Shown here in pieces: positions 14,271 to 53,793 of a DNA stretch of 64,000 nt. The notes under the pieces are model-generated. The model ran no database searches and was not told where the DNA came from. It saw only the letters and a list, made by a program, of their open reading frames with translations. The stretch is from positions 242,501 to 306,500 of IMG/VR virus record IMGVR_UViG_3300020380_000001. One strand, given 5' to 3'. Made by a program: the position numbers and the translations under genes. The first letter of the stretch is position 1. Every line of letters starts with the position of its first letter.

Positions 14271-14837
14271 CTATTTTAAGTCGTTAATAGACTTGACTAC
14301 TTCGTCTATTAAGCCATACTCTTTGGCTTCAGCTGCTGACATAAAGTTGTCACGATCAGTGTCAGCTTCAATCTTATCGAGCGGCTGTTTTGTAAAGTCC
14401 GCAAGCATTCTGTTTAGTTTATCTTTAATAGACAGAATCTCTTTAGCGTGTATCTCAAAGTCAGATGCCTGGCCTTGGAATCCGCCCAGTGGCTGGTGAA
14501 TCATTACACGGCAATTAGGCAGCGCGTAACGAACGTCGCCTGCCGCTAATAAGAACGAACCCATTGAACAGCACTGCCCGGTACCAACAGTAATAATACG
14601 AGAGTTCACAAACTTCATCGTATCATACATTGATAATCCCGCAGTTACAGCACCGCCGGGTGAATTAACGTATACGTAAATGTCGGCTTCCATCTTGGAT
14701 TCAAGATAAAGGATCTGCGCATTTACAGACTCAGCCATGTGATCATTTACAGGACCGTTAATCAGTATAATGCGGTCTTCCAAAAGTCGTGAAGCCAAAT
14801 CAACTACACGGTTATTCTCTATGATCATCGGAATCAT
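14271..14837 (-). CDS. clpP: ATP-dependent Clp protease proteolytic subunit ClpP
   Basis: SRLL.DRII, YVNSPGG, catalytic Ser in CCSMGSFLL, His in MIHQP, Asp in [17 protein letters not shown]. Confidence 0.97.
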
Positions 14838-14846
14838 ATATTTTCC

Positions 14847-15623
14847 TTATTGTGGTAAAACTTTGTCAATAGTAGCTAGTAAATCCGGATCAAATGCTAG
14901 CTTGTTTTCTGGATTGAGTGAATCCATATTCTCAATACACCATAACCAGTAATCAGCCGGAACTTCTGAGAACGGTTTGCCTTTGTGTTTTCCAAAAGGC
15001 ACTGTTTGGTATATTGTCGGTTCTTGTGCGTACTGAACAACGTCAGCGAGCATATCAGGACCGGGCTCTATAATACCGCGTACGAGCATCGTTTCTACCA
15101 TGACCTCTAGTAATCTGGCAGTGAAATATGCATCGTGCGGGGCTCTGTGAAGCTGCAAATTATCTAATTCAGGGCGGTCTTCCGACAGGTCGAAGTGATA
15201 TCGCATGTCAGGCAAATTGTATGATTCCAACTCAGGGAACAACTTGCGGCCTAGACGCAGAGTACAAATAAATTGTTCTTCAGGGATATTTGCGCCATAT
15301 GCGTCTGATACAAGGAATTCATACTTTGCATTGTGCGCAACAATAAAACGATCTCTGATAGAGTCAAAAAACTCATTACGCTTGTAAATGAACTCTTCGC
15401 GCCCTGCGAGCATGCGCGGGGTAATCAAGCACACTGATTGGGTTTTAACAGGAAGGGCACCTGCTACGTTGAATAGCTCGCCTTCCATCGACCACGTATT
15501 GCCATCAAAACTAGAAGTACCAGTTTCAATAACTTCAACATCATACGGGTCTAGCCCGGTGGTCTCATAGTCTATCACGACTAATGATTTGTAGAAATTC
15601 TTAACAAATAAATTCATTGACAT
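14847..15623 (-). CDS. DEDDh 3'-5' exonuclease, exodeoxyribonuclease X-like
   Basis: IDYETTG, VAHNAKYE, ICT, HRAPHDA; C-terminal VPFGKHKG.PFSEVP.DY..W domain. Confidence 0.88.
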   Translation of the reverse strand: MSMNLFVKNFYKSLVVIDYETTGLDPYDVEVIETGTSSFDGNTWSMEGELFNVAGALPVKTQSVCLITPRMLAGREEFIYKRNEFFDSIRDRFIVAHNAKYEFLVSDAYGANIPEEQFICTLRLGRKLFPELESYNLPDMRYHFDLSEDRPELDNLQLHRAPHDAYFTARLLEVMVETMLVRGIIEPGPDMLADVVQYAQEPTIYQTVPFGKHKGKPFSEVPADYWLWCIENMDSLNPENKLAFDPDLLATIDKVLPQ

Positions 15624-15850
15624 ATTCTCGTGTGTAGTCTGGATATATAGGACTCCGACTTGGCAGACAATGTCTCATAACTATAGCGCGGATTAAAAGG
15701 ATCTTCAACTGCGTAGTAATCAACAATTTCTTGCACTTGTTGATCAAAGCTGTCTAGTTGGGTTAAGACATGGTGGTTTACTGACCCGCGGCCGAGGTCG
15801 TCAAATACGGTTAAGTCTAAGCGATCGTCAAACTCGATATCGTCGTCCAT
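15614..15850 (-). CDS. hypothetical acidic protein (78 aa)
   Basis: First gene of the exoX-clpP unit, overlapping the exoX start. Confidence 0.65.
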   Translation of the reverse strand: MDDDIEFDDRLDLTVFDDLGRGSVNHHVLTQLDSFDQQVQEIVDYYAVEDPFNPRYSYETLSAKSESYISRLHTRICQ

Positions 15851-15885
15851 AATATATACTCTTTGTGTTTGTTATTATATCTAGC

Positions 15886-15927
15886 GCACATAATGATTAT
15901 GTGTGAATTTTTTTAATCATTATGTGC
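15886..15927. promoter_or_regulatory. nested inverted repeats (operator-like) upstream of the clpP operon
   Basis: GCACATAATGATTA-14 nt-TAATCATTATGTGC plus internal CACATAAT-G-ATTATGTG. Confidence 0.6.
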
Positions 15928-15974
15928 AACATACACAAAAAGTGGTCAACGGTCAAACTGTTTTTAAAAACTTT

Positions 15975-16322
15975 TTAAAGTTTTTTGCCTAGTGCTTCAT
16001 TCTCCAAGCGCACTGCGCCAATCTCTTTCAAGACACTAAACGGATTAATACTGGATTCGATCATATCCATAATGCATTCTACTTCGCTTGCCAAATCATT
16101 TACTGGAAAATCTCGATGACTTTCGTCCCAGTAAGCGTATATGTGTTCGGGTTTCATATCCCTGAGTATTTCACTAAACTGGTCGTCTTGCATGGCAATG
16201 TTAAAGTTATTATACACGCCCGCGTCTGCTATAAGGCGGTTAGGTTCGTTTTCTTCGTGGCGTAACGAAATCAAAAGTACAGGTATATCTAGCGCTGATT
16301 TCAAGGTTGTTATTGTTGTCAT
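15975..16322 (-). CDS. hypothetical protein (115 aa)
   Basis: ORF with AGGA SD. Confidence 0.7.
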   Translation of the reverse strand: MTTITTLKSALDIPVLLISLRHEENEPNRLIADAGVYNNFNIAMQDDQFSEILRDMKPEHIYAYWDESHRDFPVNDLASEVECIMDMIESSINPFSVLKEIGAVRLENEALGKKL

Positions 16323-16330
16323 TCTGTATC

Positions 16331-16669
16331 CTAGCTAATATTACTGACGTCAACACCAATGGTAACTACAGTGTTGGTCTTCTCCGCAATTGCGGTATTC
16401 ATCGCGTCTATGACTTTTTCCATGTCTGTCTCAGCCGTGCCATAATATGCGTTATAAACTGAAAAATTCCAACCGTTGAGGTCTTGACCTGCAAGGGCTA
16501 TTGCTTCATTGAAAAGCTTCGGTGTGATATCCTTATAAGACTTAATTCGGTCAACTTTAAGATATTTAATGAGCCTTTCCATAGGTAGTATTAGAAACGT
16601 GCCAATTTCTCTGCCGGCGTCATCGCGTCCGTGGACTAGGCGACCAATGCTTTGTATGCTTGAGCTCAT
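16331..16669 (-). CDS. hypothetical protein (likely start MSSSIQ)
   Basis: ORF 16331..16684; GAGGAG SD precedes ATG at 16669; late-type GTAAATA at 16696-16702. Confidence 0.7.
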   Translation of the reverse strand: MSSSIQSIGRLVHGRDDAGREIGTFLILPMERLIKYLKVDRIKSYKDITPKLFNEAIALAGQDLNGWNFSVYNAYYGTAETDMEKVIDAMNTAIAEKTNTVVTIGVDVSNIS

Positions 16670-16712
16670 ATAACTTCTCCTCATTATACAATAAGTATTT
16701 ACGCCACAGATG

Positions 16713-16741
16713 AAAAAGCCAGCTAGTAAACTAACCGGCTT
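16713..16741 (-). terminator. intrinsic terminator of the clpS unit
   Basis: Minus strand AAGCCGGTTAG-TTTA-CTAGCTGGCTT followed by TTT (G-U pairs in stem). Confidence 0.7.
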
Positions 16742-16787
16742 CGCCTTAGTATTTTACACATGTTGACCCCAGTTTAGGGAGCCTGTA

Positions 16788-16910
16788 TCAAACAGCCAGA
16801 ACGGCAAGTACAATAACAGTCGTCACGACTAGTAAAGTACCGTTCAATACAGCTTCTTCCCAACGTGTTACCTGTGAAAAATTAAACTTATTCACAAGAT
16901 TTTTAAGCAT
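16788..16910 (-). CDS. 40-aa small membrane protein translationally coupled to clpS
   Basis: Not in the ORF track. TAATG overlap with the clpS stop; MLKNLVNKFNFSQVTRWEEAVLNGTLLVVTTVIVLAVLAV*. Confidence 0.6.
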   Translation of the reverse strand: MLKNLVNKFNFSQVTRWEEAVLNGTLLVVTTVIVLAVLAV

Positions 16911-17221
16911 TATTCTTCCTCAATAGATACCTTTAATTTTGCCCCATTGAGTTTGTTAGCACTGTCAACTTCATTTACTTTAGTCTCAGCGATCTCGTAG
17001 GGGTAAGAGCCCACAACGCCGCGTTCACCGTTGTGCACAGTAAACATAAAGTTTATAGCTTTTTCTTGGGAATAGCCGAAAACGTTAACTAAGATGAATA
17101 TGACATAGTCCATATGCGTTACTTCGTCATTATGCATGACAACTACCACATCTTTAGGAATCTCAAAATCTTCGTTAGTGTCGATATCGGTTTTTTGAAT
17201 AGTATCCGTTTGTTGAGCCAT
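16910..17221 (-). CDS. clpS: ATP-dependent Clp protease adaptor ClpS
   Basis: VVMHNDEVTHMDYVI.IL..VF, A..FM..VH..G..VVG.YPYEIAETKV, L...IE; SD GAGGT. Confidence 0.93.
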   Translation of the reverse strand: MAQQTDTIQKTDIDTNEDFEIPKDVVVVMHNDEVTHMDYVIFILVNVFGYSQEKAINFMFTVHNGERGVVGSYPYEIAETKVNEVDSANKLNGAKLKVSIEEE

Positions 17222-18271: not shown

Positions 18272-18309
18272 ATTATACTGACGAACTACGTTTTCAGCAA
18301 GACTAAATA
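18272..18309. promoter_or_regulatory. back-to-back promoters: sigma70 (minus) and late CTAAATA (plus)
   Basis: Minus TTGCTG-17 nt-TATAAT (18272-18300); plus CTAAATA 18303-18309, 30 nt before ATG 18339. Confidence 0.65.
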
Positions 18310-18338: not shown

Positions 18339-19967
18339 ATGAAAGATATTGTATATTACTCAAAGTCGTTGTCTGCCTTAGAATCATTTAAAAAACAATG
18401 GCCCCATGCCATAATAGTAAACACGTCTGATATGGCGGAGGCAGTGCGAGTTTTAAAAAATACTTTTACTTCTGTAAGATACCTTATCGCGGAGGGTGAC
18501 GAAGACTTCCTACAGTACGTGCCTGCGGGCAGTGATGCTGACTTAATCCACACCTTTAATAACTCTCTTATCGTGCCTTGGCACACTGAAGTCACAAGCG
18601 ACTTTCATGGTTTCGGCATAGCTGTTTCAGCTAACATGAATCCAGAGTATGTCGAATTTGAAGGATTACAAAACATAACAGAGCCTGTTGATTACGTGCC
18701 GACCGATGCTATTACTGTGGTATACGGTACCGAGGAACGTTTTTATAGTGAGGATGTAATACACATACCATCGTTGGGCGAGGATGCATTGTGGCCATCA
18801 CTTGCCACTCAACCAAAGTCATGGATCCATTTTCAACATGTGTCGGTTGCTCAATCTGATACTACCTTGCGCAGTAAACTTGACCCCAACTCTATACACA
18901 GACGCGGGTCTAATTACTGCTTCACACTGCACAAGGACTTGATCGACACCAATCGTAAGTTTAAATTGGCACACTTAAAAGTTAAGGACCATCATGCGCC
19001 TAATACAGTAGTGAACCGAGCTTCGTGGCCTGTTTATCAAGATATCAATAAACTAGAAGCCAGCAATCACACCGAAGCACTCTTGGTGCCGCTCGGCTCT
19101 ACTGTCAACGACACTGCGTTAGAGTATGTACCGGAGATATACGAGCACGAAGCATCCGTCTTAATGAGGGAAACTGATTCACGTGGTTTTAGCATCGGCG
19201 GAGGCGGCGTCAAACTAGTCAACAAAGGCACTAATAAGTCAGTATACAGCAAAGCAATCGGCTCTTCCATTGCTGAGTTTGATATCATATTTTTATCAAA
19301 CAACGAGTCGTTCGCTGACGATCACTACGCTCAATTGAAAGAACGGTTCCCGCGTGCTAAACGAGTAAACGGCGTGAAGGGAATAGGCAAAGCACACCAG
19401 GTATGTGCTGAAGTCGCCAACACTGATATGTTCTGGGTAGTAGACGCCGACAGCGTGATTGTCCCTGATTTCAAGTTTGATTTCATTCCGCCCCGTAGCG
19501 CATGGCACAAGGTGTACGTTTTCAGGAGTAAGAACCCCGTTAACAATTTAATATACGGACACGGCGGTGTCAAGCTTTTTCCAAGGAACAGAGTACTGAG
19601 CGCGGATACTGATGTTGTAGACTTCACTACCAGTTTAGGCGACTTTAGCGCTGTCAGTGTACTAAGCAACATTAACGCATACGATAAAAGCGGCTGGCAT
19701 GTATGGCGTACCGCTGTACGAGAGGCGGCAAAGTTACAGGACCAAGTAAAGCACAATCCGGAAGACCTCGTATCGGCGCGTCGTCTAGAACAATGGTTAA
19801 CAGTAGGTGAAGGCAAGTACGGTAACATTTCATTAAAAGGCGCTCGTTTTGGCGCTGACCTATCACTAAATACGATTAGCATATCACCGATAAACAATGA
19901 CGAGTGGCTACGAGGATATTATGATGAGGTTCATGAATATGGAGATGACGTTTCCGAATTGGAGTGA
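18339..19967 (+). CDS. glycosyltransferase-like protein (GT-A fold, C-terminal domain)
   Basis: FDIIFLS..E..AD, RV.GVKGI..AH..CA, MFWVVDAD (DxD), N.L.YGHGGVKL, WRTA.RE..KL; N-terminal half looks like a degenerate repeat. Confidence 0.7.
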   Translation: MKDIVYYSKSLSALESFKKQWPHAIIVNTSDMAEAVRVLKNTFTSVRYLIAEGDEDFLQYVPAGSDADLIHTFNNSLIVPWHTEVTSDFHGFGIAVSANMNPEYVEFEGLQNITEPVDYVPTDAITVVYGTEERFYSEDVIHIPSLGEDALWPSLATQPKSWIHFQHVSVAQSDTTLRSKLDPNSIHRRGSNYCFTLHKDLIDTNRKFKLAHLKVKDHHAPNTVVNRASWPVYQDINKLEASNHTEALLVPLGSTVNDTALEYVPEIYEHEASVLMRETDSRGFSIGGGGVKLVNKGTNKSVYSKAIGSSIAEFDIIFLSNNESFADDHYAQLKERFPRAKRVNGVKGIGKAHQVCAEVANTDMFWVVDADSVIVPDFKFDFIPPRSAWHKVYVFRSKNPVNNLIYGHGGVKLFPRNRVLSADTDVVDFTTSLGDFSAVSVLSNINAYDKSGWHVWRTAVREAAKLQDQVKHNPEDLVSARRLEQWLTVGEGKYGNISLKGARFGADLSLNTISISPINNDEWLRGYYDEVHEYGDDVSELE

Positions 19968-20538
19968 CGTCGACATATACAACGCACAACACACAATGTC
20001 CACTAAACTAACAAATTTCTTGTCAAGCAATTTTACAGACTACGACAATATTTTAAACAACAAAGCAGGGCTTGCCACCATGTTTTGGATTTCCACTACC
20101 ATACGTGATATGGATATACTAAACGGCAAAAACATGATTATATGCGGCGATAAAGGCGTATTGGGTTCCCACTTGGCGAGTACTACCGAGCTTCGTAGAA
20201 TAGACACCGTCGGTCACGGGTTGTGTAGTGACTTACAACACTTAAACCGAGCTAACGTAATTGAAACACCGATTAACCACATCCACGATTACGGGGCTAG
20301 TGATTTTATTTTACACTGTTCATTTGACTCAATTGAAAACGCAGGCGACTGGTTTTCTGACACTACAAGGAAGCCGTTATTCGGTCTTGTCGCAACGCAC
20401 GCAAGTGAAGGATCAACGCAACCTATAAAATGTGCTGCTGACCTTATACGCTTGTCTGGTTTAAATACCGTATATTACAATGGCACTATACACTTTCCCG
20501 GTCAATCTAAGACAATGATAATAGGTAAATTCGAATGA
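19897..20538 (+). CDS. putative class I SAM-dependent methyltransferase-like protein (degenerate)
   Basis: NMIICGDKGVLGSHL...IDTV Rossmann-like pattern; DFILHCS; true start may be a downstream ATG. Confidence 0.4.
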   Translation: MTSGYEDIMMRFMNMEMTFPNWSDVDIYNAQHTMSTKLTNFLSSNFTDYDNILNNKAGLATMFWISTTIRDMDILNGKNMIICGDKGVLGSHLASTTELRRIDTVGHGLCSDLQHLNRANVIETPINHIHDYGASDFILHCSFDSIENAGDWFSDTTRKPLFGLVATHASEGSTQPIKCAADLIRLSGLNTVYYNGTIHFPGQSKTMIIGKFE

Positions 20539-20996
20539 CAGTAAATGTGGTAAAGATCAGTTTTGATGAAATCAAAGAGATCTGGTCAAATGAACTATGG
20601 CCGGGACGAACAGATGTAAATCCTTTCAGTACTATGTTGCCCTACGGAGGCAACGATATTGACATGGATAAGATTGCTAGTCCTATTTTTATTGCAATCA
20701 TGCATGATGACTTCTTGGCCGGGGTGAATAGCGTACATTATACAGGACACGGGATGGCTCGCAGTCGCGGGCTATACGTGCGCCCTGATTATAGAGGAAA
20801 AGGTTACGGAGTGGCCTTACTCAACGAAAGTAAAAAGACAGCAAGGGATGAATATAATGCAGAATACTTGTGGTCGTTACCGAAGAAGTCGGGTTGGAAA
20901 ACATATTCAGCCGCTGACTTTGTGAAGTACAGCGACTGGCTTTCGGGTTTTGAGTACGGCCCTAACGCATACGCCATGGCCAAACTATCTGATTGA
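20535..20996 (+). CDS. GNAT-family acetyltransferase
   Basis: Acetyl-CoA motif A: RGLYVRPDYRGKGYGVALL. Confidence 0.9.
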   Translation: MTVNVVKISFDEIKEIWSNELWPGRTDVNPFSTMLPYGGNDIDMDKIASPIFIAIMHDDFLAGVNSVHYTGHGMARSRGLYVRPDYRGKGYGVALLNESKKTARDEYNAEYLWSLPKKSGWKTYSAADFVKYSDWLSGFEYGPNAYAMAKLSD

Positions 20997-22490: not shown

Positions 22491-22526
22491 GTAACATTTT
22501 AAAATGTTACTAGATCTTGTAACATT
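22491..22526. repeat. three alternating GTAACATT units, including a perfect 20-bp palindrome
   Basis: GTAACATTTTAAAATGTTAC (22491-22510) and AATGTTAC-8 nt-GTAACATT (22503-22526). Confidence 0.75.
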
Positions 22527-23970
22527 ACTTCTTAGTACTGTCGTACCACACTGTTTTACCAAACGGTGCTTCAATGCGATGCTCTGGATCATCACAGATC
22601 AACCATATAGTCTCACAGTACTTGGGATCGCCCCAGCTGCCGTACGGATAACCGTCAGTAGCAACAAGTAGGATTTTAGGAACTTCACGCTCACGCTTCA
22701 AATAATCGAAGATTGATGTAAAGCTAGTACCACCACAGCCCACAAACTCAACCTTTTCTACATCAGCGATGTTGTTACGAGTAAAGTGGAAAATATTACG
22801 CGAGTCAACTTCATCATCAAACGCAAACACTTTCAAGCTAATTTGACTAAACTGGGAAAGCATGCCTTTAACTTCTGATAGGAACTCGTTCAGGTTGCGT
22901 TGACTAATTGAGCCTGAGTTGTCAATCGCAATTACTACTTCAACCTCATCGTCATACTCTTGTCCGGGTAGTACAAATGTACCGCGCCCAAATTGACGTC
23001 TATTAGGGCGTGCGTATGTGTGCAAGTTGCGGATATAACCTTTTGTACGCGCCATAAAGTATTGTTTCCAATTCACTTGAGGCTTTCTCAAGTCACGCAC
23101 AAAACGACGCACGTTGCCAGGAATATTGCCTGCACCCTTGCCCTGTGTCATATCAGCGTTGTCGTGCGCCTGCTGTACAGCGCCCACGATCTCGCGTTGC
23201 AATTCTTGAATCTCAGCGCGAGTCAGCTTGTTGCCCTTGCCGTCACCTTCTTGATCACCGTCTTTGGAGTCGCCTGACTGGCTCTCTGCGTGATCGTCAA
23301 GTGTTGAACCGTATACTTCTCTGAGCAACTGTTCTAATTCTTCGCGTGAAATTTGCTGTGACCCTTCACCGCTGCCGTCACCGTCACCGTCTTCGTCACC
23401 GGTGTCGCCTTGCCCACCACCAGCGCCGGGTACTTTCAGTCCGCCACCTTGGCCTGATCCGGATTCATCAACATCAATGCCGTGCTCGTTCTTCAGTTCA
23501 TCTTTTAACAAGTCATAAACTTGCTCTGAAGTCATACCGCTATACTTAGGGTCATACAAGCCGGTTGTTACGCCGTTAATAGTAGGCAGCGCTGTACCAA
23601 AAATTGTTGAGTTGAGCTCAATCATCTCACCATTAATAACATAGTCAGTTGCCCAACCCCATAACGTAACATTACGATTACCCACACGAGCAATACCACC
23701 GTGCTCGTATACGTTATGCATGATTTCATGGCCAATAACAAACGTTACGCCTTTTTGGTCGTCAATTGACTCGGTCCACTTTTCGTTAAACTTAACCCAG
23801 CGGCCGTTTGTTGCCATTGTATGAATGCGCGGATGATCAGCAGGCACTTGAGAAAATGCTAAGCGGCTAACTAAAACACCGAAGAACGGCTCGCTCAACA
23901 TGATGTTTACTACGGCCTGCTTGACTCGAAACTTCGCGTCATGCTTGTCTTTACTAAACGGGTTTCTCAT
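22525..23970 (-). CDS. DUF2201-type metallopeptidase plus vWA domain protein
   Basis: TMATNG, HEIMH (HExxH), ATDYVIN, acidic G/D linker, MIDAS DNSGS, GGT.F, TDG. Confidence 0.9.
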   Translation of the reverse strand: MRNPFSKDKHDAKFRVKQAVVNIMLSEPFFGVLVSRLAFSQVPADHPRIHTMATNGRWVKFNEKWTESIDDQKGVTFVIGHEIMHNVYEHGGIARVGNRNVTLWGWATDYVINGEMIELNSTIFGTALPTINGVTTGLYDPKYSGMTSEQVYDLLKDELKNEHGIDVDESGSGQGGGLKVPGAGGGQGDTGDEDGDGDGSGEGSQQISREELEQLLREVYGSTLDDHAESQSGDSKDGDQEGDGKGNKLTRAEIQELQREIVGAVQQAHDNADMTQGKGAGNIPGNVRRFVRDLRKPQVNWKQYFMARTKGYIRNLHTYARPNRRQFGRGTFVLPGQEYDDEVEVVIAIDNSGSISQRNLNEFLSEVKGMLSQFSQISLKVFAFDDEVDSRNIFHFTRNNIADVEKVEFVGCGGTSFTSIFDYLKREREVPKILLVATDGYPYGSWGDPKYCETIWLICDDPEHRIEAPFGKTVWYDSTKK

Positions 23971-24064
23971 AATCTTAAACCTTATTTGTTATTAAGTACG
24001 TCGAATATAGCAAAGGTAACCAAAGTAGTAAACACCTTTGGTCACTTTTCTATACTTTTTTATT

Positions 24065-24358
24065 TTACTCGTCGTTTCCGCAATGGACGCAAACATATGA
24101 ACGGTGTGTTGGTTTTTTACAAGCTTTGCAGCGCGTAGTGGGAACGAAAGCGTCAACTAGGGTGCGCAGAAGCTCGTTTTCTTCGCGTAGCGACTTTAAT
24201 TCGTTATCCAAGTCGCTATTAGCTTTGTCGGGTTCAACTGCCGCTTGCGGCTCTTGCGGCGCTTGAAGATTTTCTAGCTCAGCGAGCTTGGTTTTCATCT
24301 TTTCAAGACACACGGCGGTTTCTGCGTTGAGCTCACGTAACTTTTTTAAGTATTCCAT
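24065..24358 (-). CDS. coiled-coil protein with C-terminal zinc ribbon
   Basis: Start MEYLKK; CKAC...CVHC. Confidence 0.7.
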   Translation of the reverse strand: MEYLKKLRELNAETAVCLEKMKTKLAELENLQAPQEPQAAVEPDKANSDLDNELKSLREENELLRTLVDAFVPTTRCKACKKPTHRSYVCVHCGNDE

Positions 24359-24359
24359 T

Positions 24360-24611
24360 TTATTTCTCGTCGGCAAATGTAATATAAAGCAACTTGTCAC
24401 CGCACCAAGAGTGGGCTGCGGCTTCTTCTAGCGCTGTGTTAGTTGTGCGGGTTACTAAGTCCGCAGGAATATCAAACGTAGCAAGCAGGGTTTCTGCGGC
24501 GCTGCGCCAGTTGCTTGTCGCTGCCATATCGAAAGTACACTTGAGTTTCGAAAAGCTATGCTCTAGAACTTCAACAGTAACAACGGGACGAGTAAATTTT
24601 TCAGTAACCAT
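24360..24611 (-). CDS. hypothetical protein (start MVTEKF)
   Basis: AAGGAG SD before ATG 24611. Confidence 0.65.
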   Translation of the reverse strand: MVTEKFTRPVVTVEVLEHSFSKLKCTFDMAATSNWRSAAETLLATFDIPADLVTRTTNTALEEAAAHSWCGDKLLYITFADEK

Positions 24612-24642
24612 AATACTATGCTCCTTAGTCAGCAGGGAGGCC

Positions 24643-25854
24643 TTATGCCTCCGCTCCTTTGTTTGCTTTTTTCTCTTCGAGTAGGAATCTGAACTTAGCT
24701 TCACGACGCATCAAGCTGTACACTGCGCTCTTTTTCCAAGCGTTAGGGTTACGACGTGCTAGTCCGCCGATTTTAAGCGCTGTACGGATGCTAACTTCAT
24801 CCAAGTCATGCATATAAACATTCAGGAAGTCAACGATTTCTTGCTTCATGTCGTCACTCAGTTCCAAACGGTTTTTCTCAAACAGTCCAGTACTCACTAA
24901 GCTTTTGATTCTGCGAATTTTATCTTCGACTGTACCGATTTCCAAATCATAGTACAAGCTTCTTGACTTAAGTGCATCCAAGTGAGGTTTAATACGCACA
25001 CTACGAACACGATCAAAGTCAAGGTTAGAGATAAATATCACACTACCGCAGAAGTCAAACTGTCGTGGAACCCCTTCTTCTTCAAGGATACGCGACTCAG
25101 CCATCCAGCTAATTGTGCGTTTATGGTCAGTATCAAGTGCCGCTTTTAAAATGTTTAAGCTAACGTCGTCATAAAACAAAGTATCACAGTCATCAAACAC
25201 CAATACTTGACCTTTGTCTCTGTACTGAAATAGCTCTTGATAAAGCGCTATCGGGGTTATTGTACCTTTAATAACGCGATATGTACGTTCTTCAGAACCA
25301 AACGGGTTAGTAGCTGTGTGGTCGCCTGACAGGAACATGCCGTTCGTGCATAAAAAGCGGTAGTAGTCTTTGGCTACTGCGTTCACTAAGTGACTTTTAC
25401 CGATACCAGCAGGGCCACTAATAATCATGCTTGACACGTCACCTTCACACACCGACCAAGCGATATCACGTAGTATATCAAAGCTTTGCTCAATGCGCTC
25501 AAGTGCTTCTTCTTCAGTCTCAGAATTACGGTACGCTAGTTCGTAGCTTGTGTCGTCACAAGCTTCACCAACCGCCTCAGCGATTGCTGTTTTCTGCGCT
25601 TGGGCTTTTTTAGCGTCTTTCATTGCTTTGCTTTGCAAAGTAATTGTTTCACCGTCGTATTCTTCTAAAAACTCAAAGTTTTCAACGTCGTCGGAAAAAA
25701 CACGCTTGCCTTTCTTCTGCATTGGAACAGGAACAGTAACGTAATATGAATTTTTAACAGGAAGGAAAGTTGCAGAATTAGAGGTAGTTTCTAAAACACC
25801 GTTTAGTTCAGAATCGCCAGTAGTAGTCCAGCCATCAACAATACGTACAAACAT
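24643..25854 (-). CDS. phage AAA+ ATPase
   Basis: Walker A ISGPAGIGKS, Walker B VLVFDDCD, LNILKAALD, IFISN, ALKSRS arginine finger. Confidence 0.88.
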   Translation of the reverse strand: MFVRIVDGWTTTGDSELNGVLETTSNSATFLPVKNSYYVTVPVPMQKKGKRVFSDDVENFEFLEEYDGETITLQSKAMKDAKKAQAQKTAIAEAVGEACDDTSYELAYRNSETEEEALERIEQSFDILRDIAWSVCEGDVSSMIISGPAGIGKSHLVNAVAKDYYRFLCTNGMFLSGDHTATNPFGSEERTYRVIKGTITPIALYQELFQYRDKGQVLVFDDCDTLFYDDVSLNILKAALDTDHKRTISWMAESRILEEEGVPRQFDFCGSVIFISNLDFDRVRSVRIKPHLDALKSRSLYYDLEIGTVEDKIRRIKSLVSTGLFEKNRLELSDDMKQEIVDFLNVYMHDLDEVSIRTALKIGGLARRNPNAWKKSAVYSLMRREAKFRFLLEEKKANKGAEA

Positions 25855-25911
25855 AATTTCACCTTTAAATTCTGCGCTACTGCCTAATTGCTGTAACGCG
25901 TCAATGTCATA

Positions 25912-25940
25912 ATAATAGATTATTAGGTGGATGGTTGCAA
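25912..25940 (-). promoter_or_regulatory. sigma70-like promoter
   Basis: TTGCAA-17 nt-TATTAT with AT-rich UP region. Confidence 0.6.
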
Positions 25941-25977
25941 GAAAAGATTAAAAGAAAATTGATTTTTTTCCAAACAT

Positions 25978-26005
25978 AAAAAAAGGCTGCAATTGATGCA
26001 GCCTT
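25978..26005 (-). terminator. intrinsic terminator after the MoxR-like ATPase
   Basis: Minus strand AAGGCTGCA-TCAAT-TGCAGCCTT followed by TTTTT. Confidence 0.8.
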
Positions 26006-26040
26006 CAAAGGGTAGGGCGTTGCCGCCCTTGTCAGAAATC

Positions 26041-27177
26041 TTAAGCCAAACCAAGCATCGGTCCGTACTCAACAATGAATTTCGCAAAGTTCTTGTTTTG
26101 AGGCGGTACAATTTGTTCGCGGTTTGCGGCAGTCATGTACTTCGCTCTCCAGCGTCTGATCAGCGAGCTAACAGTAAAGAACGTCATCTCTGAAGTACAG
26201 AACTTTTCACAGAATTCGTACAAGTTGTCGAACATTACGCTCGTGTTAGCGTTGCCGATGCCCGTTTCCTTTTTGTCCTTGTCGTACTGCTCAATCATTT
26301 CAAGCACAGCACCGTAAGTCAAGCTGTAAAACGCTGATTGCTTTTCAATTTTCAAGTTTTTGTCGTAGTTGCCTTCAAGGATTTGTCGCGGAGTTGGTAG
26401 CGAGCTAATGTACTCCATGTGAACAACAAACTCGTTCGCAATACCGTCACCAACAGCACCGGCAACCATTAAGTCAAGTGTTTCGTTGTCAGCTTCACCT
26501 TTTTGTAGGATGTCGCTAACCACTTCCCATGAACGCGGTGTTGCAAAGCTGTACGACTCGTTTTTAAGCGCTTCGTCAAATGTGTTTAAGTGGCTCTTGC
26601 GGTGCATTAAGTAAGCAATAACCTCACGCGCCAAGCCGTTTTCAATTGCCCATTCCTGCCATTCTTCGAAGTTAACTTCAAGATTTACAAAGATAAAGCG
26701 GTTACGTAGCGGCATAGCCATGTCGAAAGTCGCGCCGCGATCTTCTGTTCTGTTACCCGCAGCAACAATATCAACGCCCGGTGGAAGTTCGTAGTCACCT
26801 AGCTTGCGATCAAGTACTAGCTGATAAGCTGCCGACTGTACAAGAGGCGGTGCAGTGTTAAGCTCGTCAAGGAAAATAATAGCGTTAGCTAGTTTTTCGT
26901 TAGTAGGAAGCGTTGACGGCTCTGCCCATTCCATCTTTTTAGTCTCTGGGTCAAAGTAAGGTACACCACGAATATCGGTGCTGTCAAACTGTGCTAGACG
27001 CATGTCAATTACTGGACGGCCTGAGCGGCTTGCAATTTGTGCAATAATTTGGGATTTACCTACACCAGGCTGTCCCATAATCATAATAGAACGCTTGATA
27101 CGGAATGCTGTTTCAACGCACTTAACAAGTGATTTCGGCGTTGCTTTGCGTGTGGTGTCTATACTATTCTCTGACAT
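26041..27177 (-). CDS. MoxR-like (AAA_5) ATPase
   Basis: GQPGVGKS, IDMRL.QFD.TDIRGVP, IIFLDELN.A...VQ.AAYQL.LDR, AAGNR..D, PL.NRF, ATPRSWE. Confidence 0.92.
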   Translation of the reverse strand: MSENSIDTTRKATPKSLVKCVETAFRIKRSIMIMGQPGVGKSQIIAQIASRSGRPVIDMRLAQFDSTDIRGVPYFDPETKKMEWAEPSTLPTNEKLANAIIFLDELNTAPPLVQSAAYQLVLDRKLGDYELPPGVDIVAAGNRTEDRGATFDMAMPLRNRFIFVNLEVNFEEWQEWAIENGLAREVIAYLMHRKSHLNTFDEALKNESYSFATPRSWEVVSDILQKGEADNETLDLMVAGAVGDGIANEFVVHMEYISSLPTPRQILEGNYDKNLKIEKQSAFYSLTYGAVLEMIEQYDKDKKETGIGNANTSVMFDNLYEFCEKFCTSEMTFFTVSSLIRRWRAKYMTAANREQIVPPQNKNFAKFIVEYGPMLGLA

Positions 27178-53734: not shown

Positions 53735-53793
53735 TATTTAGTTGAAAAAAAATTCAAAAATATCTTGACAGGATATTACTTTGGCACTATTAT
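53735..53793. promoter_or_regulatory. back-to-back promoters: late CTAAATA (minus, gp25 operon) and strong sigma70 (plus)
   Basis: TATTTAG 53735-53741; TTGACA (53765)-17 nt-TATTAT (53788) with A-tract UP element. Confidence 0.75.

What the first reader, a model, noticed from the sequence alone, without database searches (positions are those of the whole stretch)
18339..20996. Late-expressed glycosyltransferase / methyltransferase-like / GNAT cluster on the opposite strand
Seen: three overlapping plus-strand genes in a minus-strand region behind CTAAATA, with a DxD GT-A domain, a weak Rossmann-like protein and a clear GNAT. Inference: late timing fits modification of virion proteins or the host envelope (glycosylation, then methylation or acetylation) better than DNA hypermodification. 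This would be a possible capsid or fibre glycan-decoration pathway.
Basis: partly seen in the sequence, partly recalled or inferred. Interest (0 to 1): 0.65.

Follow-up and report, generated by a model that had tools for sequence, protein, structure and literature searches.

The report
Late phage glycosyltransferase–methyltransferase-like–acetyltransferase operon
A marine jumbo phage carries a small operon behind a structural-gene ("late") promoter that encodes a sugar-transferring enzyme, a worn-down methyltransferase-like partner and an acetyltransferase. The first two belong to uncharacterised families that travel together, or fused, in hundreds of phage contigs, and they most likely build a decorated glycan on a phage-made target.

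Summary
Three co-directional, overlapping plus-strand genes (18339-19967, 19921-20538, 20535-20996) lie between minus-strand genes, 30 nt behind CTAAATA.

CTAAATA is a real promoter-like element: 41 of its 63 copies are intergenic, and it precedes the tail sheath, tail tube and baseplate hub genes.

- **Gene 1** is a two-lobed GT-A glycosyltransferase. The N-terminal lobe is a degenerate copy, followed by a variable insert and a C-terminal domain with an invariant DxD. It has no Pfam match.
- **Gene 2** has a class I methyltransferase fold. It keeps only 10 of 40 family-conserved positions, including none of the likely SAM-binding acidic residues, yet is under purifying selection (dN/dS 0.11).
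- **Gene 3** is a GNAT.

New here: gene 2 is not an orphan. Its family lies downstream of this glycosyltransferase family in 40 of 80 viral loci and is fused to it in 820-1058-aa proteins. The genome holds a second, motif-intact pair.

In other phages the family sits among tail-fibre, radical SAM and sugar-modifying genes. This genome shows no hydroxymethylase, TET or C5 DNA methylase.

The best reading is a late glycan-building module, comparable to chlorovirus A064R. The acceptor (virion protein, envelope or other) is unproven. Interest is moderate.

The parts
18303..18309 (+). CTAAATA promoter-like element (late/structural class), 30 nt upstream of the glycosyltransferase start
   Evidence: The same motif stands at the same distance in the 37%-identical relative L005.
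18339..19967 (+). P0001, 542-aa two-lobed glycosyltransferase
   Evidence: dN/dS is 0.057 against L006. No transmembrane segment is predicted.
18339..18668 (+). N-terminal lobe (residues 1-110): a degenerate duplicate of the first half of the glycosyltransferase domain, lacking the NE, H and DxD motifs
   Evidence: hhalign of A4 against A5 gives probability 99.8% and E 1.4e-28. Alignments are. pLDDT is about 90.
18669..19250 (+). Variable insertion (residues about 111-304), beta-rich and modelled with low confidence; absent from the roughly 340-aa minimal family members
19251..19943 (+). C-terminal GT-A catalytic domain (residues about 305-535) followed by a helical bundle
   Evidence: VIA-align gives Z 9-11.7 to GT-A enzymes over residues 310-450. 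There are 32 invariant residues, including E323, H353, D369, D371 and K412. A sub-threshold PF00535 hit falls exactly here.
19443..19451 (+). DxD motif (D369-A-D371)
19866..19872 (+). Second CTAAATA, inside the 3' end of P0001 and 48 nt before the P0002 start; a possible internal promoter
   Evidence: CTAAATA also occurs at the equivalent codon position in L005. Function was not tested.
19921..20538 (+). P0002, 205-aa class I methyltransferase-fold protein and a motif-poor member of the glycosyltransferase-partner family (the mechanical ORF starts at 19897)
20535..20996 (+). P0003, 153-aa GNAT acetyltransferase
   Evidence: Pfam Acetyltransf_1 scores 33.3 bits against a cut-off of 20.7. Its homologues are. 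dN/dS is 0.063.
20793..20810 (+). GNAT acetyl-CoA motif A (R-G-K-G-Y-G, residues 87-92)

Best explanation
This is a late-transcribed, cytoplasmic glycan-building module of a marine jumbo myovirus distantly related to PA5oct and CBB.

P0001 is a metal-dependent GT-A glycosyltransferase. Its C-terminal domain carries the catalytic DxD. Its N-terminal lobe is a non-catalytic duplicate, and the variable middle insert probably recognises the acceptor. The searches found none of three common sugar-nucleotide enzyme classes (SDR-type epimerase/dehydratase, nucleotidyltransferase, DegT aminotransferase), so it probably uses a host nucleotide-sugar.

P0003 (GNAT) adds an acetyl group from acetyl-CoA, either to the transferred sugar or to the same acceptor.

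P0002 descends from the methyltransferase-fold partner that normally follows, or is fused to, this glycosyltransferase family. Here it has lost the residues expected to bind SAM and to catalyse, but it is still under selection. It most likely acts as a non-catalytic accessory subunit, or has a changed activity. In that case acetylation would replace, or add to, the ancestral methyl 'capping' step.

The most likely acceptor is a phage-made late product, namely virion fibre or capsid proteins.

Shown: gene structure, folds, motifs, promoter class, the conserved glycosyltransferase-to-methyltransferase order and fusions, and selection. Inferred: donor, acceptor, the order of reactions and the role of P0002.
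For: - **Folds and motifs.** GT-A; methyltransferase fold; GNAT.
- **Promoter class.**, with conservation in L005.
- **Functional link between the glycosyltransferase and the methyltransferase-like protein.**
  - A methyltransferase-like ORF occurs in 40 of 80 IMG/VR loci.
  - 41 of the 42 unfused ones lie downstream on the same strand, and 18 abut the glycosyltransferase stop. Two more are fused in one ORF.
  - Thirteen fused 822-936-aa proteins were found among the homologues.
  - A second, motif-intact pair lies at G000:C1:121027-122666.
- **Link to the GNAT.**
  - Glycosyltransferase plus GNAT without the methyltransferase-like gene in L005.
  - Glycosyltransferase, methyltransferase-like gene, then GNAT (33% identical to P0003) in a Bdellovibrionales MAG contig.
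- **State of P0002.** It keeps 10 of 40 conserved columns, against 29 of 40 for both P0125 and the module-B copy. Its dN/dS is 0.11.
- **Glycan context elsewhere.**
  - In viral loci: radical SAM in 66 of 80, UDP-glucose dehydrogenase in 17, tail-fibre or sheath-stabiliser genes in 22, an Anp1-like glycosyltransferase in 8, and a NodU-like carbamoyltransferase in 4.
  - In actinomycetes: clusters of several glycosyltransferases.
- **Localisation.** All three proteins are predicted soluble.
- **Precedents.** Chlorovirus A064R has a glycosyltransferase-glycosyltransferase-methyltransferase layout (PMC7826918). Mycobacteriophages glycosylate their virions (PMC12363180, citing Freeman 2023).
Against: - No acceptor or donor was identified.
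- The P0002 model is shallow (3 sequences, pLDDT 61).
- The complex prediction gave no verdict.
- Only three common classes of sugar-nucleotide genes were searched.
- In RsoM2USA and other phages the GNAT relatives are not next to a glycosyltransferase of this family.
- Authors who described the similar islands favour host envelope modification (PMC7029224).
Confidence: 0.45

Rival explanations
1. The module modifies host cell-envelope glycans (LPS, O-antigen or capsule precursors). This would block superinfection, or stop progeny from sticking to debris, rather than decorate the virion.
For: Glycosyltransferases in the 'host recognition cluster' islands of marine myophages have been read this way (PMC7029224; also PMC12801897). 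Cellular homologues of the glycosyltransferase domain sit in clusters of several glycosyltransferases in Streptomyces, Micromonospora and Bdellovibrionales. UDP-glucose dehydrogenase and carbamoyltransferase neighbours are typical of polysaccharide pathways.
Against: All three proteins lack membrane segments. No flippase, polymerase or lipid-carrier enzyme was found beside either module. A structural-class late promoter leaves little time before lysis for envelope remodelling to matter in a lytic jumbo phage. In other phages the family sits inside structural and tail-fibre regions.
Confidence: 0.2
2. The glycosyltransferase acts on a peptide or small-molecule product in a RiPP-like or secondary-metabolite pathway. 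The methyltransferase-like protein and the GNAT would then be tailoring enzymes.
For: Radical SAM or SPASM genes flank the family in 66 of 80 viral loci, and one protein fuses it to a radical SAM-SPASM domain. The 544-aa class sits beside a halogenase and an AMP-binding enzyme. The S-glycosyltransferases SunS and ThuS are among the best structural matches.
Against: This genome has no radical SAM gene above threshold, and none near either module. No precursor-peptide-like gene is evident in the operon. GT-A matches are generic to the fold. Radical SAM enzymes also tailor sugars.
Confidence: 0.15
3. The module hypermodifies phage DNA by glycosylating a modified base and then acetylating or methylating it.
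For: Phage GT-A enzymes that glycosylate 5hmC exist, and many sit near structural genes (bioRxiv 10.1101/2023.12.21.572611). From my own knowledge, the DNA-modifying Mom of phage Mu is expressed late, so late timing does not exclude DNA as the target.
Against: The only thymidylate-synthase-family gene passes the thymidylate synthase equivalog cut-off, and its closest relatives in related jumbo phages are annotated thyA. No C5 DNA methylase was found. No TET/JBP was found, but that control did not ring, so the result is weak. None of 791 neighbour ORFs in the 80 loci is ThyA-like. The described DNA glycosyltransferases carry R...DDD...EDY/F motifs and resemble JGT and TarP. This family instead has NE...H...DxD...K and no such top hits.
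Confidence: 0.08

Closest known systems
Chlorovirus PBCV-1 A064R (glycosyltransferase - glycosyltransferase - methyltransferase protein that extends and O-methylates the capsid glycan)
   Same: It is virus-encoded, cytoplasmic and independent of host glycosylation machinery. It has GT-A domains in tandem followed by a methyltransferase domain. The phage family occurs as the same layout fused in 820-1058-aa proteins. The A064R domain 1 structure is a structural match (2p6w, Z 8.9; 2p72). The domain functions of A064R are given in PMC7826918.
   Different: There is no detectable sequence homology. Here the N-terminal glycosyltransferase lobe is degenerate, the methyltransferase-like part is a separate and motif-poor protein, and a GNAT is added. 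The host is bacterial. The acceptor is unknown.
Mycobacteriophage virion glycosylation operons (Che8, Corndog, Myrna)
   Same: Phage-encoded glycosyltransferases glycosylate capsid and tail-tube proteins (PMC12363180, citing Freeman et al. 2023). A small operon of transferases in a tailed phage is the same idea.
   Different: The glycosyltransferase families and host phylum differ. No homology was tested here, and the primary paper could not be read. No proteomic evidence exists for this phage.
GT2-type GT-A glycosyltransferases (SpsA, TarS, SunS/ThuS, K4CP chondroitin polymerase)
   Same: The nucleotide-sugar-binding Rossmann-like fold, the acidic motif after the first strand (..NE..), and the DxD after strand 4 are shared. 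K4CP also has two GT-A lobes.
   Different: The protein is below the Pfam GT2 cut-off (13.7 against 23.3 bits). A profile search finds no solved structure. The nearest 30 ESM Atlas clusters are 95-100% viral and unnamed.
Glycosyltransferase and radical SAM cassettes in the 'host recognition cluster' islands of marine pelagimyophages and cyanomyophages
   Same: The same neighbours were found around this glycosyltransferase family in IMG/VR loci: tail fibres, radical SAM and UDP-glucose dehydrogenase (PMC7029224).
   Different: In this jumbo phage the module is a compact three-gene operon on the opposite strand, away from radical SAM genes and with a GNAT. The published description did not single out this glycosyltransferase family or its methyltransferase-like partner.
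T4-type late promoters (TATAAATA)
   Same: A short AT-rich element with a TAAATA core lies a fixed short distance before structural genes, with no -35 element. The T4 consensus is from my own knowledge.
   Different: The first base is C, giving CTAAATA, with A variants. A gp55-like sigma factor was not searched for. No transcript start was mapped.

Membership tests
GT-A fold glycosyltransferase | Nucleotide-diphospho-sugar transferase (Rossmann-like alpha/beta/alpha) fold | tested here: met
   Model pLDDT is above 90 over residues 310-530. Foldseek finds 29 PDB hits at E<=1e-3, among those listed nearly all GT-A glycosyltransferases (plus the nucleotidyltransferase HddC). VIA-align gives Z 9-11.7 over residues 310-450. 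Sugar nucleotidyltransferases share this fold and also match.
GT-A fold glycosyltransferase | DxD metal and nucleotide-sugar binding motif after strand 4 | tested here: met
   D369-A-D371 is invariant in 70 and in 19 aligned homologues.
GT-A fold glycosyltransferase | Membership of Pfam Glycos_transf_2 (PF00535) | tested here: not met
   No Pfam hit at E<=1. The genome-wide scan gives 13.7 bits against a cut-off of 23.3, over residues about 319-381.
GT-A fold glycosyltransferase | Sugar transfer from a nucleotide-sugar donor | not testable with these tools
   This needs an enzyme assay.
Class I SAM-dependent methyltransferase (P0002) | Seven-stranded methyltransferase fold with a C-terminal beta-hairpin | tested here: met
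   Foldseek finds 270 PDB hits at E<=1e-3; those listed are class I methyltransferase-fold enzymes, including spermidine and polyamine synthases. The 50 VIA-align entries shown score Z 9.7-12.1 and are nearly all methyltransferases or methyltransferase domains. The model is only moderate (pLDDT 61, pTM 0.66).
Class I SAM-dependent methyltransferase (P0002) | Gly-rich motif I and an acidic residue at the end of strand 2 that binds the SAM ribose | tested here: not met
   The family consensus is CGGWxGVLA ... SxDID. P0002 has CGDKGVLG and G106/H107 in place of D-I-D. The NTSCEH, QxNN and EH motifs are also lost, and only 10 of 40 conserved columns are kept.
Class I SAM-dependent methyltransferase (P0002) | Match to a curated methyltransferase sequence family | tested here: not met
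   P0002 has no Pfam, PHROG or NCBIfam hit. Only 1 of 29 family members touches Methyltransf_31, at E 9.5e-4.
GNAT acetyltransferase (P0003) | Pfam Acetyltransf_1 above the gathering score | tested here: met
   33.3 bits against 20.7; Acetyltransf_7 scores 32 against 27.
GNAT acetyltransferase (P0003) | Acetyl-CoA motif A (R/Q-x-x-G-x-G/A) | tested here: met
   R-G-K-G-Y-G at residues 87-92.
T4-type late promoter | Short conserved element at a fixed distance before late (structural) genes | tested here: met
   41 of 63 copies are intergenic, and 32 lie 10-56 nt upstream of starts. The bearers include the tail sheath, tail tube and baseplate hub genes.
T4-type late promoter | Dedicated late sigma factor (gp55-like) and late transcripts that start at the element | not tested
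   I knew no family accession for gp55.
Phage DNA-hypermodifying GT-A (5hmC glycosyltransferases, JGT-like) | Genomic partner that makes the acceptor base (hydroxymethylase, or C5 methyltransferase plus TET-like oxygenase) | tested here: not met
   There is a canonical thyA only and no PF00145. PF12851 was not found, but its control was silent. None of 791 neighbour ORFs is ThyA-like.
PBCV-1 A064R-like glycosyltransferase-glycosyltransferase-methyltransferase glycan machinery | Tandem GT-A domains plus a methyltransferase domain acting on one glycan | tested here: inconclusive
   The architecture is matched at family level by natural fusions and by gene order. Homology to A064R is only at fold level, and the chemistry is untested.

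The most novel reading that the evidence does not exclude
The glycosyltransferase domain and its methyltransferase-fold partner form a widespread, so far unnamed two-component (or fused) glycan-capping machine of tailed phages. It gave at least 600 pattern matches in IMG/VR (594 confirmed as relatives), lies in the tail-fibre islands of marine myophages, and occurs twice in this jumbo phage. It would glycosylate virion fibre or capsid proteins. In this operon the methyl cap would be in the course of being replaced by an acetyl cap, with the methyltransferase kept as a non-catalytic subunit. That would make it a bacterial-virus counterpart of chlorovirus A064R and would point to common virion glycosylation in marine phages.
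Probability: 0.3. Interest if true: 0.65.

Novelty: new variant of a known kind. Interest (0 to 1): 0.45.

Why it matters
Virion glycosylation by phage-encoded enzymes is known from a few mycobacteriophages and from giant algal viruses. Whether it is common in marine and Gram-negative phages is an open question.

This work ties two unnamed protein families into one conserved module through gene order, natural fusions and a duplicated pair in one genome. It places that module in the structural and tail-fibre regions of many marine phages. That gives a defined pair of genes to test for virion, envelope or DNA glycosylation.

The operon also offers a natural case of an enzyme partner losing its cofactor motifs while staying under selection. 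If the module does decorate fibres or capsids, it bears on host range, on antibody and grazer recognition, and on the annotation of the glycosyltransferase 'auxiliary metabolic genes' of ocean viruses.

Tried and rejected
**Searches that found nothing**
- Megablast of the region against 50,697 phage records gave no match.
- Pfam, PHROGs and NCBIfam gave nothing for P0001 or P0002.
- Sequence searches of the PDB, with single sequences and with profiles, found nothing meaningful for either family.
- Pfam and NCBIfam gave nothing for the flanking genes or for the genes beside the second module.
- The 233-aa gene upstream of a GNAT relative in L107 is not a member of this glycosyltransferase family.
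- GNAT relatives in L105, L106 and L108 are not next to such a glycosyltransferase.

**Ideas rejected**
- [quoted passage not shown] This came from its having only two relatives among 1.84 billion representatives and from its absence in L005. It was rejected once a three-sequence profile found the family next to the glycosyltransferase in 40 of 80 loci, in fusions, and in the phage's own second module.
- "P0002 is a decaying pseudogene." Rejected because dN/dS is 0.11.

- Complex prediction of the glycosyltransferase C-terminal domain with P0002 gave no verdict (score 0.00). It is evidence neither for nor against binding.
- Freeman et al. 2023 could not be fetched.

Full report
**What is there**

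The window is G000:C1:242501-306500 of a 306.5-kb viral record with direct terminal repeats, estimated complete. Its tail sheath is 40% identical to that of Pseudomonas phage PA5oct and 36-38% identical to those of CBB and XbC2. Near-identical contigs come from Tara ocean metagenomes. It is therefore a marine jumbo myovirus.

Three plus-strand ORFs lie at 18339-19967 (P0001, 542 aa), 19897-20538 (P0002) and 20535-20996 (P0003, 153 aa). The neighbours on both sides are on the minus strand. GC content matches the rest of the genome.

P0002 most likely starts at 19921. The ATG at 19897 reads ACG in two close relatives. The ATGATG at 19921 is conserved and follows GAGGA. The only distant homologue first found also begins at that point.

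**The promoter**

CTAAATA lies at 18303-18309, 30 nt before the first start codon. Its count in the window is no higher than chance (14 against 12.7 expected). Its placement in the genome is very uneven, however:
- 41 of 63 copies fall in the roughly 9% of sequence that is intergenic.
- 32 copies lie 10-56 nt, mostly 25-32 nt, upstream of a same-strand start.

Genes behind the motif include the tail sheath, tail tube, baseplate hub and a 2012-aa fibre-like protein. In the window it also heads the operon that holds the 1310-aa and 3504-aa proteins. The head operon, which contains the gp23-like capsid gene, is headed by CATAAATA.

The motif also stands 30 nt before the orthologous gene in L005, a relative only 37% identical in protein. 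Calling it the late or structural promoter class is therefore well founded. No transcript data could be obtained, and no gp55-like sigma factor was sought.

A second CTAAATA (19866-19872) lies inside the 3' end of P0001, 48 nt before the P0002 start. L005 has one at the equivalent codon position. It may be an internal promoter, but this is unexplained.

**P0001**

No Pfam, PHROG, NCBIfam or PDB sequence match was found. A word search found more than 200 metagenomic homologues of the last roughly 230 residues, with variable N-terminal parts. An alignment shows 32 invariant residues, including E323, H353, D369, D371 and K412.

The model (pLDDT 77.6 overall, above 90 in the C-terminal domain) matches GT-A glycosyltransferases. 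Foldseek hits include K4CP, SunS/ThuS, PcManGT, RmlT, the polypeptide GalNAc-transferases, Mimivirus R699 and PBCV-1 A64R. VIA-align gives Z 9-11.7 over residues 310-450. Sugar nucleotidyltransferases share the fold and also match. The NE motif after strand 1 and the DxD after strand 4 are the glycosyltransferase pattern. A sub-threshold PF00535 hit falls on exactly this stretch.

Minimal family members of about 340 aa consist of an N-terminal lobe of about 100 aa followed by this domain. P0001 has an extra insert of about 200 aa between them.

The N-terminal lobe is a duplicate of the first half of the glycosyltransferase domain (hhalign probability 99.8%, E 1.4e-28). Some homologues keep all catalytic motifs in it. 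P0001 and most others do not.

The family has no solved relative by profile search. Its 30 nearest ESM Atlas clusters are unnamed and 95-100% viral. It is not confined to viruses, though: 228 stretches were confirmed in bacterial genomes and MAGs, mainly Bdellovibrionales and Streptomyces, Kitasatospora and Micromonospora.

**P0002**

It has no family hit, and only two relatives among 1.84 billion representatives. The model, built from three sequences (pLDDT 61, pTM 0.66), matches class I SAM methyltransferases. Foldseek gives 270 hits at E<=1e-3. The 50 VIA-align entries shown score Z 9.7-12.1.

A profile of the three sequences changed the picture. It finds a homologue in 40 of the 80 IMG/VR loci fetched with the glycosyltransferase alignment.
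- Of the 42 unfused homologues, 41 lie downstream of the glycosyltransferase on the same strand.
- 18 of those abut or overlap the glycosyltransferase stop codon.
- Two more are fused to the glycosyltransferase in one ORF.
- Thirteen of the 822-936-aa proteins from the first search carry this domain at their C-terminus, after two glycosyltransferase lobes.

The phage's own genome holds a second pair. A 328-aa glycosyltransferase (30% identical to P0001 over the domain) is followed directly by a 218-aa methyltransferase-like protein (E 1.6e-44). These are the last two genes of a packed six-gene operon headed by AATAAATA.

The family consensus has the look of a SAM methyltransferase, with the motifs CGGWxGVLA, SxDID, TxDM and INTSCEH. 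Of 40 columns conserved in the viral members, the second-module protein and P0125 each keep 29. P0002 keeps 10 and lacks the acidic strand-2 residues and the NTSCEH, QxNN and EH motifs.

Even so, dN/dS against the 91%-identical relative is 0.11. This compares with 0.057 for the glycosyltransferase, 0.063 for the GNAT and 0.135 for a neighbouring gene. P0002 is therefore a selected but probably non-catalytic or re-purposed member of the family.

**P0003**

It is a GNAT by Pfam with the acetyl-CoA motif RGKGYG. It has about 28 small homologues, mostly in phage-like contigs.

It follows the glycosyltransferase directly in L005, where the methyltransferase-like gene is missing. In a Bdellovibrionales MAG contig, a 33%-identical GNAT follows a methyltransferase-like gene downstream of a glycosyltransferase of this family. 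In RsoM2USA and three other contigs the GNAT relatives are not beside such a glycosyltransferase. In a fourth (L107) the 233-aa gene just upstream of the GNAT relative is not a member of this family. None of the 80 viral loci has a GNAT of this family. The link between the GNAT and the pair is therefore recurrent but much looser than the link within the pair.

**Context and target**

Around the glycosyltransferase family in the 80 viral loci I found:
- radical SAM genes in 66,
- UDP-glucose dehydrogenase in 17,
- tail-fibre, Peptidase_G2 or sheath-stabiliser genes in 22,
- an Anp1-like glycosyltransferase in 8,
- a NodU-like carbamoyltransferase in 4.

This matches the 'host recognition cluster' islands described in marine pelagimyophages and cyanomyophages (PMC7029224). 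Actinomycete homologues lie among other glycosyltransferases.

This genome has none of the common sugar-nucleotide enzyme classes searched. It has a canonical thymidylate synthase only. It has no C5 DNA methylase, no TET/JBP (with a silent control), and no radical SAM gene above threshold. No ThyA-like protein occurs among the 791 neighbour ORFs. All three proteins lack membrane segments.

Together these results favour assembly of a small decorated glycan in the cytoplasm late in infection, using host sugar donors. They argue against DNA hypermodification of the kind described for phage GT-A enzymes (bioRxiv 10.1101/2023.12.21.572611). They do not identify the acceptor. Virion fibre or capsid proteins are the most economical guess. 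The precedents are chlorovirus A064R (PMC7826918) and mycobacteriophage virion glycosylation (PMC12363180). Host envelope glycans and a peptide or small-molecule product remain open.

**Verdict**

The thing is a new variant of a known kind, namely virus-encoded glycan machinery. It is built from two uncharacterised but widespread families whose partnership seems not to have been described. I base that on the papers I could search, not on an exhaustive review.

Interest is moderate. The chemistry is ordinary. The conserved pairing, its duplication in one genome and the motif-poor yet selected partner are concrete and testable.

Noticed in passing
G000:C1:121027-125001 (outside the window; L004 covers 120501-124169): This is a second glycosyltransferase plus methyltransferase-like pair, of 328 aa and 218 aa. 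Its methyltransferase-like protein keeps the family motifs. The pair closes a tightly packed six-gene minus-strand operon headed by AATAAATA. The four upstream genes have no family match.
   Followed up: partly
window 19866-19872; L005 2686-2692: CTAAATA also occurs inside the 3' end of the glycosyltransferase gene, at the equivalent codon position in two relatives that are only 37% identical. It could be an internal promoter for the downstream gene or genes, or a by-product of coding constraint.
   Followed up: partly
window 14271-17221 (-): A ClpP-like or prohead-protease-like gene (14271-14837), an RNase T/DnaQ-like exonuclease (14847-15623) and a ClpS-like adaptor (16910-17221) sit together just upstream of the operon. 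A phage-borne ClpS next to a ClpP-like protease is unusual.
   Followed up: no
window 22525-27177 (-): A DUF2201/VWA-like protein (22525-23970; PHROGs labels it an HNH endonuclease), a 403-aa AAA_16-like protein (24643-25854) and a MoxR-like AAA ATPase (26041-27177) lie together. This VWA and MoxR set is conserved in the relatives L005-L007.
   Followed up: no
window 27272-53708 (-): A run of giant genes encodes proteins of 1261 aa (with a weak Calx-beta hit in a relative), 1437, 3504 and 1310 aa. CTAAATA elements stand at 53735, 38833 and 36503. These are likely virion fibres or decoration proteins and are candidate acceptors for the glycosyltransferase.
   Followed up: no
G000:C1:117600-126000: Several small genes carry host-like TTGACA-N17-TATAxT promoters (for example before 117863, 119861 and 125745). 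These contrast with the TAAATA class and probably mark early genes.
   Followed up: no
L120 3995-8150 (Bdellovibrionales MAG contig JAGQZY010000009.1): The same three families appear in the order glycosyltransferase, radical SAM-like gene, methyltransferase-like gene, GNAT. The contig may be a phage binned into the MAG.
   Followed up: partly
L132-L190 (Streptomyces, Kitasatospora, Micromonospora, Salinispora chromosomes): Homologues of the glycosyltransferase domain at 28-34% identity sit in a conserved cluster with Glyco_tranf_2_4 and GT4-type glycosyltransferases, an HTH regulator and peptide deformylase. No methyltransferase-like partner was detected there. ORF calling in these GC-rich loci was crude.
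   Followed up: partly
L021, L022 (ENA marine scaffolds): The 544-aa class of the glycosyltransferase family lies among four radical SAM genes, a tryptophan-halogenase-like gene and an AMP-binding enzyme. The layout resembles a natural-product cluster.
   Followed up: no
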